In this document: positions 35,953 to 45,541 of the stretch, piece by piece
How the letters are laid out: each line of letters begins with the position of its first letter
How positions within the stretch are numbered: position 1 is the first letter of the stretch
Virus record (IMG/VR): IMGVR_UViG_3300044641_007115
Location: 1 to 64,000 of that record
Strand: one strand, 5' to 3'
DNA length: 64,000 nt
Notes under the pieces: generated by a model
Seen by the model: the letters and a program-made list of their open reading frames with translations, nothing else
The model's database searches: none
What the model was told of the DNA's origin: nothing
Position numbers and translations under genes: made by a program

Positions 35953-36546
35953 ATGCAGAACACTCTAATCCCAATGGTCGTAGAACAGTCTCCGCGCGGT
36001 GAACGCTCCTACGACATCTATTCCCGTCTTCTCAAAGAGCACATCATTTTCCTTGGCACCGCCATCGACGACGACGTTGCCAATCTGGTCGTCGCACAGC
36101 TTCTTTTCCTTGCGGCGGAAGACCCGGACAAGGACATCAGCATGTACATCAATTCGCCGGGCGGATCGATCACGGCGGGCCTTGCTATTCTCGATACGAT
36201 GAATCTGGTCAAGCCCGACATCGTGACCTATTGCGTCGGTCAGGCCGCGTCGATGGGTGCTGTGTTGCTGGCGAACGGTGCCAAAGGGAAACGCTTTGCC
36301 TTGCCGCACGCACGCATCCTGATTCACCAGCCGTTGATGCGCGGACTCAGCGGACAGGCCAGCGACATCGACATTCACGCGAAAGAAATCTTGCGCATGC
36401 GCGAAATTCTCAACGGAATCTTAGCGACCAAGACCGGACAACCGCTCGAAAAGATCAGCGCGGACGTGGATCGCGACTACATCTTGGAAGCGGATGCCGC
36501 TGTCAAGTATGGCCTTGTGGACAAGGTGATCGAGAAACAGCCGTAA
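35953..36546 (+). CDS. clpP: ATP-dependent Clp protease proteolytic subunit
   Basis: [22 protein letters not shown] (Ser), IHQP (His), DRD (Asp): intact triad. Confidence 0.98.
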
Positions 36547-37997: not shown

Positions 37998-38099
37998 TGG
38001 CGGGGAGAATCGGATTTGAACCAATGATAACCATCACAAAACGGCTGTTGCCAGCAAAAGGCATGCAACGGTGCCTTAACCAAGCTAGGCTATCTCCCC
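37998..38099 (-). tRNA. 102-nt class II tRNA-like gene (G73, Ser-like) with an expanded anticodon arm; identity unresolved
   Basis: GGGGAGA/TCTCCCC acceptor, normal D and T arms, variable stem, CCA; no canonical 7-nt anticodon loop. Confidence 0.65.
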
Positions 38100-38488: not shown

Positions 38489-38564
38489 TCGACTAAGAAT
38501 TGGACTCGAACCAACTTCTCCGGGCGTGCGGCCCGGCGCTTTAACCATGTTAAGCTACATCTCC
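38489..38564 (-). pseudogene. Degenerate tRNA (loop CC-GCA-CG)
   Basis: Good D, anticodon and T arms, but 3' acceptor strand does not pair and no CCA. Confidence 0.6.
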
Positions 38565-38617
38565 GAATGGTGGGGACAGATAACCAATCTGAGGCGGCTT
38601 GTCCTGAAAACTATTAT

Positions 38618-38842
38618 GACACGAAGCAAAGCCGTTCAAAGCAAGAACCAACTATCAGAAGCATCAAAGTGCCTGTCAAATGTCACCGTACAGGTCTGAC
38701 GGTCACCCGGTTGCCCGGTAGCGAAGCATTCCCCATAACACGGGGAAGACCGAACTAGTAAGCCCGGCCATCTGTTTGTAACCAGATAATCTTCCGACTT
38801 CGGCTTAGAACGGCTCTGCCGGAAGTACTTATACTTCGTATC
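38618..38842 (-). ncRNA. ~225-nt highly structured RNA of unknown class
   Basis: 12-bp closing helix GCAGAGCCGTTC/GAACGGCTTTGC; four inner hairpins including CCGG-GCAA-CCGG and TTCCCC/GGGGAA. Confidence 0.6.
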
Positions 38843-38851
38843 GTGGAATCT

Positions 38852-38931
38852 TGGTGGAACACGTGGGAATTGAACCCACCTGAATATCCTCATTGCGAAT
38901 GAGGCGACCACCCCATGCAGTCCCGTGCCCC
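38852..38931 (-). tRNA. tRNA-Ala(CGC)
   Basis: GGGGCAC/GTGTTCC with G3:U70, TT-CGC-AA loop, CCA. Confidence 0.85.
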
Positions 38932-39024: not shown

Positions 39025-39104
39025 TGGTGGAACACGTGGGAATCGAACCCACCTGAATATCTTCGATGCCATCGAAGCGGCCACCCCATGCAGCCCCGTG
39101 CCCC
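39025..39104 (-). tRNA. tRNA-Ala(GGC)
   Basis: Near-identical to Ala(CGC) except anticodon arm; G3:U70; CCA. Confidence 0.85.
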
Positions 39105-39113
39105 ATTTGAATT

Positions 39114-39190
39114 TGGTGGACCGTGCCGGGATCGAACCGGCTACCTTCCGCTTGCAAGGCGGATGCTCTCCCAAAATGAGCTAACGGCCC
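39114..39190 (-). tRNA. tRNA-Ala(UGC)
   Basis: GGGCCGT/ACGGTCC G3:U70, CT-TGC-AA loop, canonical arms, CCA. Confidence 0.95.
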
Positions 39191-39239
39191 AAATGGACAA
39201 AACCTAAAATGACTTGAGGGGAGAAAGTCTGTGGGCGGC

Positions 39240-39362
39240 TTAAGCCGCTGCTGCCGTAGCAGCGATGGTATCGATCACAATATCGATGCCACCGGCAAAC
39301 GCAGTCGCGCGCACAGACATCGTAGTGGCTGTGTGCGTTCGAGTTGTGAAGGTTGCCTTCAT
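39240..39362 (-). CDS. 40-aa Ala/Thr-rich leader peptide upstream of the tRNA operon (not in ORF track)
   Basis: MKATFTTRTHTATTMSVRATAFAGGIDIVIDTIAATAAAA*; GAGG 10 nt before ATG; hairpin GCGGC-TTAA-GCCGC over the stop. Confidence 0.55.
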   Translation of the reverse strand: MKATFTTRTHTATTMSVRATAFAGGIDIVIDTIAATAAAA

Positions 39363-39381
39363 TGGTGCGTTGCCTCATCTC

Positions 39382-39411
39382 TATTTATACATACCGCCGG
39401 GCGGATGTCAA
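39382..39411 (-). promoter_or_regulatory. tRNA operon promoter: TTGACA -35 with TATAAA -10 overlapping a T4 late TATAAATA
   Basis: ttgacatccgcccggcggtatgtataaata on the - strand. Confidence 0.7.
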
Positions 39412-39731
39412 CATTTTTCGAAAGAAAAATCGGAAATTTTCAATCCCCACCGGATCGGGAACTCTTGATGCATCATGTCTCTCAGGTTGTTCCCAAAAAC
39501 TTCCTTGGTGGCTTTCCGCGCGGTTTCGATGTCCGCGCCTTGTGCAACATGCATGTCGCGCATCTTGACGGACCAGAAATCCAATGTGCGCTGAATGATT
39601 CCGATAGCCTGTTCCCGGCTGGTGCAAAGGGATTCTTCTTCTTGCTCCCACGACATCGATTCACCGGTCACGGCATCCGTGTGGAACCATTTTTGGGATG
39701 CAACAACTTGCGCGGCGTCTCTGATAGTCAT
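39408..39731 (-). CDS. Hypothetical protein
   Basis: Protein-like ORF after the SprT gene. Confidence 0.5.
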   Translation of the reverse strand: MTIRDAAQVVASQKWFHTDAVTGESMSWEQEEESLCTSREQAIGIIQRTLDFWSVKMRDMHVAQGADIETARKATKEVFGNNLRDMMHQEFPIRWGLKISDFSFEKC

Positions 39732-39743
39732 GCGACCATGCTA

Positions 39744-40649
39744 TCACGATCCGATGACTTTGGAATTCCACTTTCCGAAATCCCGGCCACCGATAGTCGG
39801 AGCGGGTTTGTTCGGGTTGAAGAAGTCGTCCTTGGCCTTCTGATCGACGGCTCTTTCATCGGTCGTGTTCATCGTCCACAACTGAACAGCACTCTTCCGA
39901 TCCGTCAACAGCATGTCTTTCGTCTTGTCACTTACGCCGTAACGGGTCGCCGGTAATGTCCGGCTGAGTGTAATCCGGGTTGCCAGTTTCGATACCGGGA
40001 CGAAAAACGCGGTGATCTCCATGTCGTACTTGATCCAAAGATGACGCAAGGTCGCTTTGAGTTCATTGGCCTTGGCTTTCCATGTCGGCATCAGAACAGA
40101 GTATTGCATGTCGCTCCGGTTGGTATCGATATAGGTCACCAATACACATGGCTTGCCGGTCACATGTTGCATTTCTTCCGGGCTAATCGTGTCCGACACC
40201 GGCACCGGACGACCGAACTCTTTGGATACAGAATGTACTTTCGTCAAGAAGCGTGATCCGTGGTTCTCGAACCAATACCCCTGTGTGATGAGGTACGCAT
40301 GGACCATTTCATGCAGAAGAATGCCGTCCCACTTCCATTCCGGTCGCACCGGCACAGCCGTGCTCATGGTGATCTTCAGGTCATAGACTTCGCCGTTCAT
40401 CTTCGTGTACGCGGCCAGCGAACCAGACGGTTTTCGTTCGCCCGGTGCTAGTTTGAATTTGCCAGTCGTTGTACCAGATACCGCCTTGCCAGTCTTTCCC
40501 CACACCACCGGCATATTGTTCGGGATCGCGCTATCGAAGAACAGCTTGTTGAACAATTGGAACTTCTTCACCAACGGATAGTCTTTGAATGGCAAGACTT
40601 CATCGCTAGTGTGTCCTTCCCGGATGAAATGTCGATATGTCTTGAACAC
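39744..40649 (-). CDS. SprT-like zinc metalloprotease with capsid-targeting-like N-terminus
   Basis: ILLHEMVHAY...HG..F; LFN..FF...P; start MFKTYRHFIRE. Confidence 0.8.
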   Translation of the reverse strand: MFKTYRHFIREGHTSDEVLPFKDYPLVKKFQLFNKLFFDSAIPNNMPVVWGKTGKAVSGTTTGKFKLAPGERKPSGSLAAYTKMNGEVYDLKITMSTAVPVRPEWKWDGILLHEMVHAYLITQGYWFENHGSRFLTKVHSVSKEFGRPVPVSDTISPEEMQHVTGKPCVLVTYIDTNRSDMQYSVLMPTWKAKANELKATLRHLWIKYDMEITAFFVPVSKLATRITLSRTLPATRYGVSDKTKDMLLTDRKSAVQLWTMNTTDERAVDQKAKDDFFNPNKPAPTIGGRDFGKWNSKVIGS

Positions 40650-44797: not shown

Positions 44798-44863
44798 AGT
44801 TCTAGTATAGAAGTTTTGTACCTATATGTCAATAGGTCCCTGTGGAAAACTTCCAAGAGAAAC

Positions 44864-44890
44864 AAAAACGCCGGACCCGAAGGTCCGGCA
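44864..44890 (-). terminator. tmRNA terminator
   Basis: gccggacc-ttcg-ggtccggc gtttttgttt. Confidence 0.85.
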
Positions 44891-45190
44891 TTCTTGCGAA
44901 GGTCTTTCTTTAACAAGGCACCCTCAGTTCCCCGGATGGGTGCAATTAAGCAGCCATCGCCAGAACATTGCTGTTGGCAGTTATTGTTTTACGCTGTTAC
45001 CCGAATCCGCTCATAAAACTTCATCGGTTTCGGTAGTCGTCTACCGGTCCACTCCACTTTCCCAACTCACTGCCAATCGAATTCCGGGACGCCCCCGTAT
45101 GGTGCCCCCTTTCGAGAGCGTGTTTTGGTGGAGGCGGCGGGAGTCGAACCCGCGTCTTGCCAGCGTCAGAATCGGATCATCGCGGACAAC
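44890..45190 (-). ncRNA. ssrA: Circularly permuted two-piece tmRNA (acceptor piece ~45188-45126, 29-nt intervening segment, coding piece from 45096); tag ANSNVLAMAA at 44978-44946
   Basis: GCGGGTTCGACTCCCGC-CGCCTCC-ACCA precedes GGGGGCG; 7-bp acceptor with G3:U70; helix 2 pairs across pieces; ATAACT-GCC resume context. Confidence 0.92.
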
Positions 45191-45196
45191 TCTAAT

Positions 45197-45541
45197 TTAG
45201 CACACCACAGAATTTGATGCAAGCTGTTCTTCGTCGGACATGGCAGCAAATTTCTGCGGAGTTGGACCACCGAAGGGCGGCGTCAACATGGACTTCAGCA
45301 AGGCTTCGCGCACGTTCCGGCCCCGGAACATGTTGTTCGCACCTTGCCCCGGTTCCAGCCGGGCGACAGTGGTGCCGGTCGCATCGGTTTCGATAGACGG
45401 CCAATCACTGTCAATCCAATCGAGCATGTCATCGGCGGTGATGTTGCGCTCCGCATGTTTGACATATTTCGACGGATCGAACTGCCCGGCTGGAATCCAT
45501 ACTTTATGGTCGGGGCGGTCGATCAGACTGACTTCGTACAT
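45197..45541 (-). CDS. Hypothetical protein (start MYEVSLID)
   Basis: ATG overlaps upstream TGA; longer ORF call is shadowed by 45541..45909. Confidence 0.55.
   Translation of the reverse strand: MYEVSLIDRPDHKVWIPAGQFDPSKYVKHAERNITADDMLDWIDSDWPSIETDATGTTVARLEPGQGANNMFRGRNVREALLKSMLTPPFGGPTPQKFAAMSDEEQLASNSVVC

What the first reader, a model, noticed from the sequence alone, without database searches (positions are those of the whole stretch)
39240..39411. Leader peptide whose composition mirrors the downstream tRNA operon (Ala/Thr/Asp)
Seen: between the operon promoter and the first tRNA is an unannotated 40-codon ORF, MKATFTTRTHTATTMSVRATAFAGGIDIVIDTIAATAAAA. It has 11 Ala, 10 Thr and 2 Asp, and uses all four Ala and all four Thr codons. 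The well-formed tRNAs downstream are Ala x3, Asp x2 and Thr x3. Thr clusters at the start, Ala at the end, a GCGGC-TTAA-GCCGC hairpin covers the stop, and the peptide ends in an AA degron-like tail. Established: amino-acid-rich leader peptides sense charged tRNA in attenuators such as thrL. Inference: a translation-coupled sensor controlling a phage tRNA array, which I do not know to be described. No clear U-rich attenuator is visible, so Rho or processing control would be needed.
Basis: partly seen in the sequence, partly recalled or inferred. Interest (0 to 1): 0.8.

Follow-up and report, generated by a model that had tools for sequence, protein, structure and literature searches.

The report
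Translated Ala/Thr-rich leader before phage tRNAs
A 33-40 codon reading frame, half of it alanine and threonine codons, sits in a conserved folded RNA leader just before a jumbo phage's alanine/threonine tRNA genes, looks translated, and has the switch-like pairing of an attenuator, which would be an undescribed way to control tRNA supply, though no experiment supports this yet.

Summary
The 40-codon ORF at 39362-39240 (-) lies between a conserved promoter and the first tRNA-Ala. It has the highest Ala+Thr content (52.5%) of the 788 ORFs of at least 30 aa in the window, and none of 11,607 shuffled ORFs reach that value. Asp is not enriched.

Five related phage lineages keep the ORF at 33-40 codons and 50-64% Ala+Thr:
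- Length changes between conserved blocks are all multiples of three.
- Substitutions per codon position are 9:4:16.
- A Shine-Dalgarno sequence is retained.

The leader is also a constrained RNA. Its synonymous sites change 10-25 times more slowly than the neighbouring gene's. Helices show compensatory changes: one holds the AUG, one holds the SD, and one is a hairpin with the stop codon in its loop.

One new point is that codons 15-17 (GUCUGUG) can pair in two ways. They can pair with the Thr-codon cluster, or with CACAGAC just after the stop hairpin. The second pairing is supported by two compensatory pairs in one lineage.

No intrinsic terminator exists, and there are no expression data. 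All relatives carry the same tRNA set, so co-variation could not be tested.

Verdict: a real, probably translated leader with attenuator-like layout. The sensor function is plausible (about 0.4) but unproven, and the output step is unknown.

The parts
39412..39431 (-). A/T-rich element resembling an UP element (GATTTTTCTTTCGAAAAATG) upstream of the -35
   Evidence: It is conserved as TTTT(T)CTTnnGAAAA(A) in all lineages while the flanks diverge. The UP-element role is inferred.
39384..39411 (-). Sigma-70-type promoter: TTGACA (39411-39406), 16-nt spacer, TATAAA (39389-39384)
   Evidence: It is the only TTGAC-N15-18-TATAAA match in the 64 kb window. Both hexamers are conserved in all lineages while the spacer varies. 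The consensus scanner missed it because the last base of the -10 is A. The stop codon of the upstream 107-aa gene lies inside the -35.
39373..39376 (-). Shine-Dalgarno GAGG, 7-10 nt before the AUG
   Evidence: GAGG is present in four lineages and replaced by AGGUGA in L023, which is still SD-like.
39240..39362 (-). Leader ORF of 40 codons plus TAA (MKATFTTRTHTATTMSVRATAFAGGIDIVIDTIAATAAAA). Thr codons cluster at codons 4-14 and Ala codons at 34-40.
   Evidence: It is conserved at 33-40 codons. Length changes are in frame. Changes per codon position are 9:4:16 (p = 0.023). pS exceeds pN.
39366..39374 (-). P1 5' strand (GGCAACGCA), overlapping the SD
   Evidence: It pairs with 39303-39294. The helix is recovered independently in the minimum-energy fold of each of five lineages, with a changed register and sequence in L023 and L018.
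39294..39303 (-). P1 3' strand (UGCGUUUGCC, codons 20-23)
   Evidence: In L023 an inserted G in the 5' strand pairs with a U>C change here. In L018 the pairing is AUUGAGG.CAAGC with GCUU.UCCUCGAU.
39347..39361 (-). Hairpin A (UGAAGG-CAA-CCUUCA), whose stem holds the U and G of the AUG
   Evidence: RNAalifold finds it with two pairs changed on both sides in L018 and G-C to G-U in the L008 group.
39308..39337 (-). Hairpin B: segment 1 (CGCACACAGCCA, codons 9-13, within the Thr cluster) pairs with segment 2
   Evidence: 95.7% of cells are paired in seven sequences, with one G-C to G-U change and no double change. It is compatible with the data but not proven.
39312..39318 (-). Segment 2 (GUCUGUG, codons 15-17), complementary to both segment 1 and segment 3
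39264..39293 (-). Hairpin C (GGUGG.AUCGAU...AUCGAU.CCAUC), a dispensable module
   Evidence: Its 5' 21 nt (GGUGGCAUCGAUAUUGUGAUC) are lost in frame in L016, L017 and L018, so the hairpin cannot form there.
39250..39263 (-). Hairpin D (GCUGC-UACG-GCAGC)
   Evidence: It is conserved without covariation.
39235..39248 (-). Hairpin E (GCGGC-UUAA-GCCGC) with the stop codon in its loop
   Evidence: Present in all lineages. L018 has GCGGU-CUA-ACCGC, with one pair changed on both sides.
39227..39233 (-). Segment 3 (CACAGAC), which pairs with segment 2 to form long-range helix B'
   Evidence: Seven pairs, 100% paired in seven sequences. Two pairs changed on both sides in L023 (GGUUGUG with CACAACC). Duplex energy is -11.8 to -18.5 kcal/mol in every lineage.
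39213..39226 (-). Polypyrimidine tract (UUUCUCCCCUC) plus AAG. It is poor in G, contains CCUC and resembles both a rut site and an anti-SD.
   Evidence: A run of 11-13 pyrimidines is kept in all five lineages although its sequence varies. Runs of at least 12 occur about once per 5 kb in the window.
39114..39190 (-). First gene of the array, tRNA-Ala(UGC)
   Evidence: ARAGORN and Rfam at 63 bits.

Best explanation
The element is a translated leader ORF inside a structured, switch-like 5' leader of the phage tRNA operon. It most likely acts in cis as a ribosome-mediated attenuator-type control.

Proposed sequence of events:
1. Transcription starts at a strong, conserved promoter.
2. A ribosome loads on the SD/AUG before these are locked into helix P1 and hairpin A.
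3. The ribosome reads a Thr-codon cluster (codons 4-14) that overlaps segment 1, and later an Ala-codon cluster (codons 34-40) that ends in a stop codon held in a hairpin loop.
4. If Thr decoding is slow, the ribosome covers segment 1. Segment 2 (GUCUGUG) then pairs with segment 3 (CACAGAC) just after the stop hairpin, instead of forming hairpin B.
5. If Ala decoding is slow, the ribosome sits on the stop hairpin and abuts segment 3 and the polypyrimidine tract.
6. Either event would change what happens to the RNA between the stop codon and the first tRNA, and so set how much of the Ala/Asp/Thr tRNA array is produced.

Because there is no intrinsic terminator, the output step is most likely Rho loading on the G-poor pyrimidine tract, as in tnaC- or mgtL-type control, or altered leader processing or stability.

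Shown by computation: the promoter, the ORF with its coding-type evolution, the helices and the dual complementarity of segment 2.

Inferred: translation in vivo, stalling at Thr/Ala codons, the switch itself, and the whole output step.
For: Composition:
- Ala+Thr content is extreme (rank 1 of 788 ORFs; 0 of 11,607 shuffled ORFs).
- It is conserved at 50-64% in five lineages.
- The insertions in L018 are mostly Thr/Ala codons (one Ser), and the deleted block, GGIDIVI, contains neither Ala nor Thr.
- The two enriched residues are the two amino acids for which the array encodes all three isoacceptors.

Coding signature:
- Four length changes between conserved blocks are all multiples of three, while 1-2 nt indels occur only outside the ORF.
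- Changes per codon position are 9:4:16 (p = 0.023).
- pS is 2.5-6 times pN in the divergent pairs.
- SD-like sequence is retained even where it changes (GAGG to AGGUGA).

RNA constraint:
- Leader dS is 0.03-0.54, against 0.73 to saturated in the adjacent SprT-like gene.
- The fold z-score is -3.8.
- Compensatory changes occur in hairpin A, P1, hairpin E and B' (3 double changes against 0.4 in shuffles, reached by 1 of 500 shuffles).

Switch-like layout:
- Segment 2 is complementary both to segment 1 in the Thr cluster and to segment 3 after the stop in every lineage.
- Masking a ribosome footprint on the Thr cluster makes B' the predicted fold in 4 of 6 variants.

Precedent: uORF-dependent Rho attenuators such as tnaC, mgtL, corL, speFL and cruR, as listed in PMC12360218.
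Against: - There are no expression, ribosome or 3'-end data. The RNA runs found did not hold the phage.
- No conserved terminator or other recognisable expression platform exists. A weak 3:4-like hairpin is seen only in some lineages.
- The free tail is only 45-64 nt, which is short for a rut site. B' masks only 7 nt of it.
- The SD and AUG are both buried in stable helices, so translation may be rare.
- P1 and B' could instead form a static pseudoknot rather than alternate.
- Hairpin B has no covariation.
- Thr and Ala codons are interspersed rather than in long tandem runs.
- Part of the Ala richness coincides with GCN-built hairpins D and E.
- Only five lineages of one phage clade exist, and all have the same array.
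- The coding tests are only modestly significant (p about 0.01-0.02 each), and triplet-repeat slippage could bias indels toward multiples of three.
Confidence: 0.4

Rival explanations
1. The ORF is an ordinary small-protein gene, the last cistron before the tRNAs. Its 33-40 aa peptide acts in trans. The RNA helices (P1, hairpin A) only throttle its own translation, and the Ala/Thr richness is a property of the peptide.
For: The ORF shows coding-type evolution and keeps its SD. The core RTHTATTM-VR is almost invariant. Public gene callers predict it. It could also be read from upstream transcripts, because no terminator precedes it.
Against: The peptide is low in complexity. It tolerates a 7-residue deletion and Thr/Ala insertions. 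It has no family or fold match. The invariant core coincides with RNA segments 1 and 2, so its conservation may be at the RNA level. This view does not explain helix B', the conserved tail, or the match to the tRNA identities.
Confidence: 0.2
2. The leader is translated, but only as a general device that couples a ribosome to the polymerase, keeps Rho or RNases off the leader, or times RNA folding. It would not sense any specific amino acid. The Ala/Thr richness would be a by-product of the GCN- and ACN-rich sequences that build the helices and the C/A-rich linker.
For: The Ala run is encoded by the GC-rich hairpins D and E, and the Thr cluster by the C/A-rich segment 1. Nucleotide-level constraint dominates the region. 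Use of all eight codons is not significant.
Against: Only one of the three reading frames turns these sequences into Ala/Thr codons. Insertions add further Thr/Ala codons. The coincidence with the identities of the downstream tRNAs remains unexplained: for a random pair of amino acids it is about 1 in 190 (own estimate).
Confidence: 0.2
3. The region is a non-coding structured RNA and the ORF is incidental and untranslated. It could be a 5' leader or a stable small RNA released by RNase P cleavage at the first tRNA, like the stable RNAs of the T4 tRNA cluster.
For: Sequence conservation is very high (97% identity where neighbouring proteins are 69-88% identical). Several helices show covariation. 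The SD and AUG are sequestered. Two other frames across the region are also free of stops.
Against: Substitutions show three-base periodicity and length changes are in frame. SD-like sequence is kept despite sequence change. ATG and TAA stay in the same frame in all lineages. There is no Rfam match.
Confidence: 0.15

Closest known systems
Ribosome-mediated transcription attenuators with amino-acid-rich leader peptides (thrL, hisL, pheL, ilvL, trpL)
   Same: A short ORF with an SD lies directly after the promoter. It is strongly enriched in codons for specific amino acids. The regulatory codons overlap segment 1 of an alternative 1:2 / 2:3 pairing. The logic of sensing charged tRNA is the same.
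   Different: There is no 3:4 intrinsic terminator with a U tract. The genes downstream are tRNAs, not biosynthetic enzymes. Two amino acids are enriched, in interspersed clusters. The leader's own SD and AUG are buried in helices. There is no sequence or profile match to the Rfam or Pfam leader families.
uORF-dependent Rho attenuators (tnaC, mgtL/mgtA, corL/corA, speFL, cruR; review PMC12360218)
   Same: These have a leader ORF without an intrinsic terminator. A pyrimidine-rich, G-poor tract starts a few nucleotides after the stop codon, where a paused or terminating ribosome would shield it. As in mgtL, translation would remodel the leader structure.
   Different: Rho dependence is untested. 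The candidate rut is short (45-64 nt before a structured tRNA). The proposed signal is decoding of Thr/Ala codons, not a small molecule or ion. The target is a tRNA array in a phage.
Stable small RNAs encoded in the phage T4 tRNA gene cluster (species 1 and 2; from my own knowledge)
   Same: These are structured RNAs co-transcribed with phage tRNAs and presumably released by tRNA processing.
   Different: This element lies at the 5' end, carries a conserved ORF with an SD and shows coding-type evolution. No homology was tested or found.
The mRNA-like domain of tmRNA
   Same: It has an Ala-rich C-terminal coding end, a stop codon in a hairpin loop, and lies next to an alanine-accepting tRNA structure. 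The phage also encodes a tmRNA at 45219-44855.
   Different: This ORF has its own SD and AUG. The downstream tRNA-Ala is a normal tRNA with an anticodon. No tmRNA model matches the leader.
Attenuator-derived dual-function leaders (rnTrpL/peTrpL of Sinorhizobium; PMC6614838 and PMC7968998, abstracts only)
   Same: A leader RNA and its peptide may each act beyond cis attenuation, so a released structured leader could have a trans role.
   Different: There is no evidence here for any trans target.

Membership tests
Classical leader-peptide attenuator (thrL/hisL type) | A short ORF with an SD between the promoter and the first regulated gene | tested here: met
   ORF at 39362-39240, GAGG 7-10 nt upstream, promoter at 39411-39384.
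Classical leader-peptide attenuator (thrL/hisL type) | Enrichment of codons for the sensed amino acid(s) | tested here: met
   21 of 40 codons are Ala or Thr. The ORF ranks first of 788, and no shuffled ORF reaches this. The fraction is 50-64% in all lineages. Asp is not enriched.
Classical leader-peptide attenuator (thrL/hisL type) | Mutually exclusive pairings 1:2 and 2:3, with segment 1 under the regulatory codons | tested here: inconclusive
   Segment 2 is complementary to segment 1 (no covariation) and to segment 3 (two compensatory pairs). Whether the two pairings alternate in vivo is unknown.
Classical leader-peptide attenuator (thrL/hisL type) | A 3:4 intrinsic terminator (GC-rich hairpin plus U tract) before the first gene | tested here: not met
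   No terminator-like site on the - strand. Hairpin E lacks a U tract. Only weak, unconserved 3:4-like hairpins are seen.
Classical leader-peptide attenuator (thrL/hisL type) | Homology to the Thr_leader RNA family or the Leader_Thr protein family | tested here: not met
   No Rfam match at E <= 10 on the leader alone. No Pfam match at E <= 10. The Atlas feature hit to Leader_Thr scored 0.68, which is below the tool's stated 0.9 reliability mark (a lead only).
uORF-dependent Rho attenuator (tnaC/mgtL type) | A C-rich, G-poor unstructured rut next to or within the uORF | tested here: inconclusive
   Tail C:G is 16:7, 16:7, 19:12, 14:6 and 16:4, with a conserved tract of 11-13 pyrimidines. The tail is only 45-64 nt long.
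uORF-dependent Rho attenuator (tnaC/mgtL type) | Termination depends on Rho and is relieved by ribosome stalling | not testable with these tools
   This needs in vitro transcription with Rho and NusG, or bicyclomycin treatment in vivo.
T-box riboswitch | Specifier loop and T-box sequence detectable by the Rfam model | tested here: not met
   No Rfam hit in the leader.
tmRNA | A tRNA-like domain plus pseudoknots and a tag ORF without SD or AUG; match to tmRNA models | tested here: not met
   The tmRNA models match only 45236-44866, not the leader. The leader ORF has its own SD and AUG.
Protein-coding gene under purifying selection | Frame preserved and more synonymous than non-synonymous change | tested here: met
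   Length changes are in frame. Changes per codon position are 9:4:16, p = 0.023. pS exceeds pN. The sample is small and the significance modest.

The most novel reading that the evidence does not exclude
This would be the first leader-peptide attenuator found to control tRNA genes. The phage would measure, by translating a Thr/Ala-rich leader, how well Thr and Ala codons are currently decoded. It would then raise or lower transcription or maturation of its own complete Ala and Thr isoacceptor sets through a terminator-less RNA switch (segment 2 pairing with segment 1 or with segment 3). That would be a closed feedback loop on tRNA supply during infection, and possibly a response to host depletion of these tRNAs.
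Probability: 0.3. Interest if true: 0.85.

Novelty: new variant of a known kind. Interest (0 to 1): 0.68.

Why it matters
Leader-peptide attenuation is a textbook mechanism for amino-acid biosynthesis operons. I know of no case, and two literature searches here found none, in which it governs tRNA genes themselves. Phage tRNA arrays are usually treated as constitutive codon-usage or anti-defence cargo.

A cis sensor that reads decoding capacity for the same amino acids would show that phages regulate tRNA supply by feedback. It would also add a terminator-less attenuator architecture, and it would provide a compact sensor part of about 190 nt for Thr/Ala decoding.

Even if the sensor idea fails, the element remains a well-defined object for study. 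It is a conserved RNA carrying a translated ORF, with several helices supported by covariation, at the head of a jumbo-phage tRNA operon.

Tried and rejected
- Close relatives in GenBank phages: none by megablast. Only distant Tenacibaculum phage hits to the SprT-like neighbour.
- DNA-pattern scans for more leaders: IMG/VR returned only the five known contigs. The metagenome and genome collections returned nothing real; L022 was a chance hit.
- Peptide-profile searches of 5.8 and 1.8 billion proteins: only the same clade was found. The test of uORF composition co-varying with array content is therefore impossible in this family.
- Expression evidence: four wastewater RNA runs matched only tRNA fragments from other organisms.
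- Known RNA families (Thr_leader and other leaders, T-box, tmRNA): no match.
- Known protein families: no match. The Atlas similarity to Leader_Thr is compositional and below the tool's stated 0.9 reliability mark, a lead only.
- Intrinsic terminator: none found.
- All eight codons used as a design feature: rejected, P = 0.50.
- Asp mirroring: rejected, because Asp is at background frequency.
- SsrA-like AA degron: weak, since L018 ends in AAAV.
- An apparent counter-example, L016 lacking tRNA-Ala(GGC) while using five GCC codons, was withdrawn. The tRNA is present at L016:2196-2272 but was missed by ARAGORN and Rfam.
- ORF openness as evidence of coding: weak, because two other frames across the region are also free of stops.
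- MAFFT alignments misplace gaps in the tail, so a covariance-model-fitted alignment was used instead. Such an alignment leans towards the modelled structure. The key compensatory pairs (window against L023) involve no gaps.

Full report
**1. What is there**

On the - strand the window carries a tRNA array:
- Ala(UGC) at 39190-39114, Ala(GGC) at 39104-39025, Ala(CGC) at 38931-38852.
- A Cys-like tRNA at 38565-38491.
- Two Asp(GUC) tRNAs at 38320-38168.
- Thr(CGU), Thr(GGU) and Thr(UGU) at 37994-37743.
- One further tRNA-like gene at 38099-38001, seen only by Rfam.

Upstream lie a SprT-like gene (39744-40649, Pfam PF10263) and a 107-aa ORF (39408-39731). The 217 nt between that ORF and the first tRNA contain:
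- TTGACA (39411-39406), a 16-nt spacer and TATAAA (39389-39384);
- GAGG (39376-39373);

This promoter pattern occurs only once in the 64 kb window. The consensus scanner missed it because the -10 ends in A.

**2. Is the composition more than chance?**

Yes for Ala and Thr.
- Ala+Thr is 21 of 40 codons. This is the highest value among all 788 ORFs of at least 30 aa in six frames; the next is 40.5%.
- None of 11,607 small ORFs from shuffled sequence reach it.
- The binomial probability is 1.2e-7 against the window's long ORFs.

- Asp (2 of 40) is at background frequency.
- Use of all eight Ala and Thr codons is expected half of the time under the phage's own codon usage.

**3. Relatives**

The window comes from a jumbo phage. 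It is identical to IMGVR_UViG_3300044641_007115 (224 kb), and the same SprT protein also occurs on a 319 kb contig. GenBank phages hold no close relative.

I recovered five distinct lineages of the leader, using the neighbouring SprT-like protein and a profile of the peptide. All have the leader in front of the same kind of array:
- the window type;
- L008/L024;
- L023;
- L016/L017;
- L018/L025.

DNA-pattern scans of the viral, metagenome and genome collections found no more. An exhaustive profile search of 1.8 billion protein representatives also found no more. The family is therefore confined to one phage clade. Every member has Ala x3, Asp x2 and Thr x3. In L016 the Ala(GGC) gene was missed by the tools but can be read at L016:2196-2272.

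**4. Evidence that the ORF is translated**

All lineages keep the ATG, the frame and the TAA, with lengths of 40, 40, 40, 33 and 37 codons.
- The distances between conserved blocks vary only by multiples of three. ATG to CGA is 21 or 27 nt. CGC to GAT is 36, 15 or 18 nt. ACG to TAA is 12 or 15 nt.
- Indels of 1-2 nt occur only in the 5' UTR and after the stop codon.
- Minimum changes per codon position are 9:4:16 (chi-square p = 0.023).
- The proportion of synonymous differences exceeds the non-synonymous one 2.5- to 6-fold in the divergent pairs.
- The SD is retained, and in L023 it is replaced by another SD-like sequence (GAGGCA to AGGUGA).
- Non-synonymous changes are mostly conservative: I/V, T/A, A/V.
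- The insertions in L018 add mostly Thr/Ala codons (one Ser). The 7-codon deletion in L016 and L018 removes GGIDIVI, which has no Ala or Thr. The Ala+Thr fraction therefore stays at 50-64%.

Caveats:
- The sample is small.
- Two other frames across the region are also free of stops.
- Triplet-like repeats could bias indels toward multiples of three.

I put the probability that the ORF is translated and under selection at about 0.8.

**5. Evidence that the leader is also a constrained RNA**

The leader is about 97% identical between lineages whose flanking proteins are 69-88% identical. Against the window:

| Comparison | Adjacent SprT-like gene, dS | Leader ORF, dS |
|---|---|---|
| L008/L024 | 0.73-0.80 | 0.03 |
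| L023 | about 2 | 0.17 |
| L016 | about 2 | 0.20 |
| L018 | saturated | 0.54 |

"Silent" sites in the leader therefore evolve 10-25 times more slowly than in the neighbouring gene.

The leader folds at -67 kcal/mol, with a z-score of -3.8. Per-lineage folds and RNAalifold recover the same helices:
- **P1.** The SD-proximal GGCAACGCA (39374-39366) pairs with UGCGUUUGCC in codons 20-23 (39303-39294). In L023 the pairing becomes GGUGAACGC with GCGUUCGCC, where an inserted G pairs with a U>C change. In L018 it becomes AUUGAGG.CAAGC with GCUU.UCCUCGAU.
- **Hairpin A** (39361-39347). Its stem contains the U and G of the AUG. Two pairs are changed on both sides in L018.
- **Hairpin B** (39337-39308).
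- **Hairpin C** (39293-39264). Dispensable; its 5' 21 nt are deleted in frame in L016 and L018, so it cannot form there.
- **Hairpin D** (39263-39250).
- **Hairpin E** (39248-39235). The stop codon lies in its loop. One pair is changed on both sides in L018.

**6. A new feature: dual complementarity of segment 2**

GUCUGUG (39318-39312, codons 15-17) is the 3' arm of hairpin B. Its 5' arm, segment 1, lies in the Thr-codon cluster. The same seven bases are the exact complement of CACAGAC (39233-39227), a motif conserved 0-2 nt after hairpin E in an otherwise variable tail.

In L023, segment 2 reads GGUUGUG and the tail motif reads CACAACC. That is two compensatory pairs (U-A to G-C and C-G to U-A).

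I built a covariance model (R1) and used its fitted alignment (A9):
- The long-range helix (B') has 7 pairs, all cells paired, and 2 pairs changed on both sides.
- The modelled structure as a whole has 3 such pairs, against 0.4 in column shuffles. Only 1 of 500 shuffles reaches the observed value.
- 99% of cells are paired, against 21-67% when the partners are slid.
- Hairpin B is 95.7% paired but shows no double change.
- The seg2:tail duplex is -11.8 to -18.5 kcal/mol in every lineage.
- When a ribosome footprint is imposed on the Thr cluster, B' becomes the predicted fold in 4 of 6 variants.

P1 and B' cross each other, so they either form a pseudoknot or belong to different states.

After segment 3 comes an uninterrupted tract of 11-13 pyrimidines. 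It is kept as a tract in all lineages although its sequence changes. It is G-poor and contains CCUC.

**7. What is missing**

- No intrinsic terminator exists.
- A weak 3:4-like hairpin is seen in the window and L023 but not in L016 or L018.
- Rfam has no match to the leader, even at E <= 10 on the leader alone.
- Pfam has none for the peptide.
- The Atlas similarity to Leader_Thr (0.68) is compositional only.
- The only RNA runs sharing sequence words with the region contained tRNA fragments from other organisms. There is therefore no evidence on transcription, translation or 3' ends.

**8. Interpretation**

The layout is that of a ribosome-mediated attenuator without its terminator:
- a promoter-proximal ORF;
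- regulatory-type codon clusters;
- segment 1 under the Thr cluster;
- segment 2 with two alternative partners;
- a stop codon and segment 3 within reach of a terminating ribosome.

The most economical mechanism is that the speed of decoding Thr codons, and then Ala codons, decides which fold the leader adopts or whether the tail stays covered. That in turn would set Rho loading, processing or stability upstream of the first tRNA. Known uORF-dependent Rho attenuators (tnaC, mgtL, corL, speFL, cruR; PMC12360218) give precedent for terminator-less designs. None controls tRNA genes, and two literature searches found no description of a leader peptide before a tRNA operon.

I give the cis-sensor reading about 0.4. 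The rivals are:
- a trans-acting small protein, 0.2;
- translation as a non-specific coupling device, with Ala/Thr richness a by-product of the RNA, 0.2;
- a non-coding leader or stable RNA, 0.15.

**9. Verdict**

Conservation, likely translation and an attenuator-like alternative pairing are new support for it. The function itself and the output step remain inferred.
- If true, this is a new variant of a known kind of control, applied to a new class of target.

Noticed in passing
window 38566-38851 (-); L018:2057-2328; L016:2205-2575; L008:6883-7177: A block of about 200 nt in the gap between tRNA-Ala(CGC) and the Cys-like tRNA is strongly conserved across lineages. It has hairpin-like CCCCGUGUUAUGGGG and CCGGGCAACCGGG, and a TTGACA-17-GATAGT promoter-like site at 38679-38651. 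Gene callers place a 60-aa ORF there in L018. There is no Rfam match. It may be an undescribed ncRNA inside the tRNA array.
   Followed up: partly
window 39025-39104 (-) and 38852-38931 (-): tRNA-Ala(GGC) and tRNA-Ala(CGC) are 80 nt long with an enlarged D-arm. ARAGORN calls them, but Rfam's tRNA model does not. One scores only 27 bits, against tRNA-Sec. Both keep the G3:U70 alanine identity pair.
   Followed up: partly
window 38001-38099 (-): A tRNA-like gene found only by Rfam (42.7 bits). It is about 25 nt longer than a standard tRNA and ARAGORN missed it. Its identity is unknown.
   Followed up: no
window 38491-38565 (-); L008:7178-7253; L018:2329-2398: The 'tRNA-Cys' has C rather than U at position 33. 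Its anticodon loop differs between relatives (CCGCACG against AGCAAUC, and ARAGORN reports a 4-base anticodon in L008). It may not be an ordinary decoding tRNA.
   Followed up: no
L016:1626-2272: An HNH endonuclease gene is inserted in the array of one relative. A tRNA-Ala(GGC) that overlaps its 3' end (2196-2272, read by eye, G3:U70 present) was missed by both ARAGORN and Rfam.
   Followed up: partly
window 44855-45219 (-) and 35953-36546 (+): The phage carries its own circularly permuted tmRNA (tag ANSNVLAMAA; Rfam tmRNA_permuted, 98 bits) and a ClpP protease gene (Pfam E = 3.5e-81), on either side of the tRNA array. Together they would form a phage-borne trans-translation and degradation module.
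   Followed up: no
window 39408-39411 (-): The stop codon of the 107-aa gene lies inside the -35 hexamer of the tRNA-operon promoter. In L016 this gene is absent and the promoter directly follows the SprT-like gene.
   Followed up: no
window 39231-39956 (+): A 241-aa ORF on the opposite strand runs antisense through the leader and the 107-aa gene. The antisense frame is free of stops as a by-product of the GCN/ACN codons on the sense strand, so it is probably a shadow ORF.
   Followed up: partly
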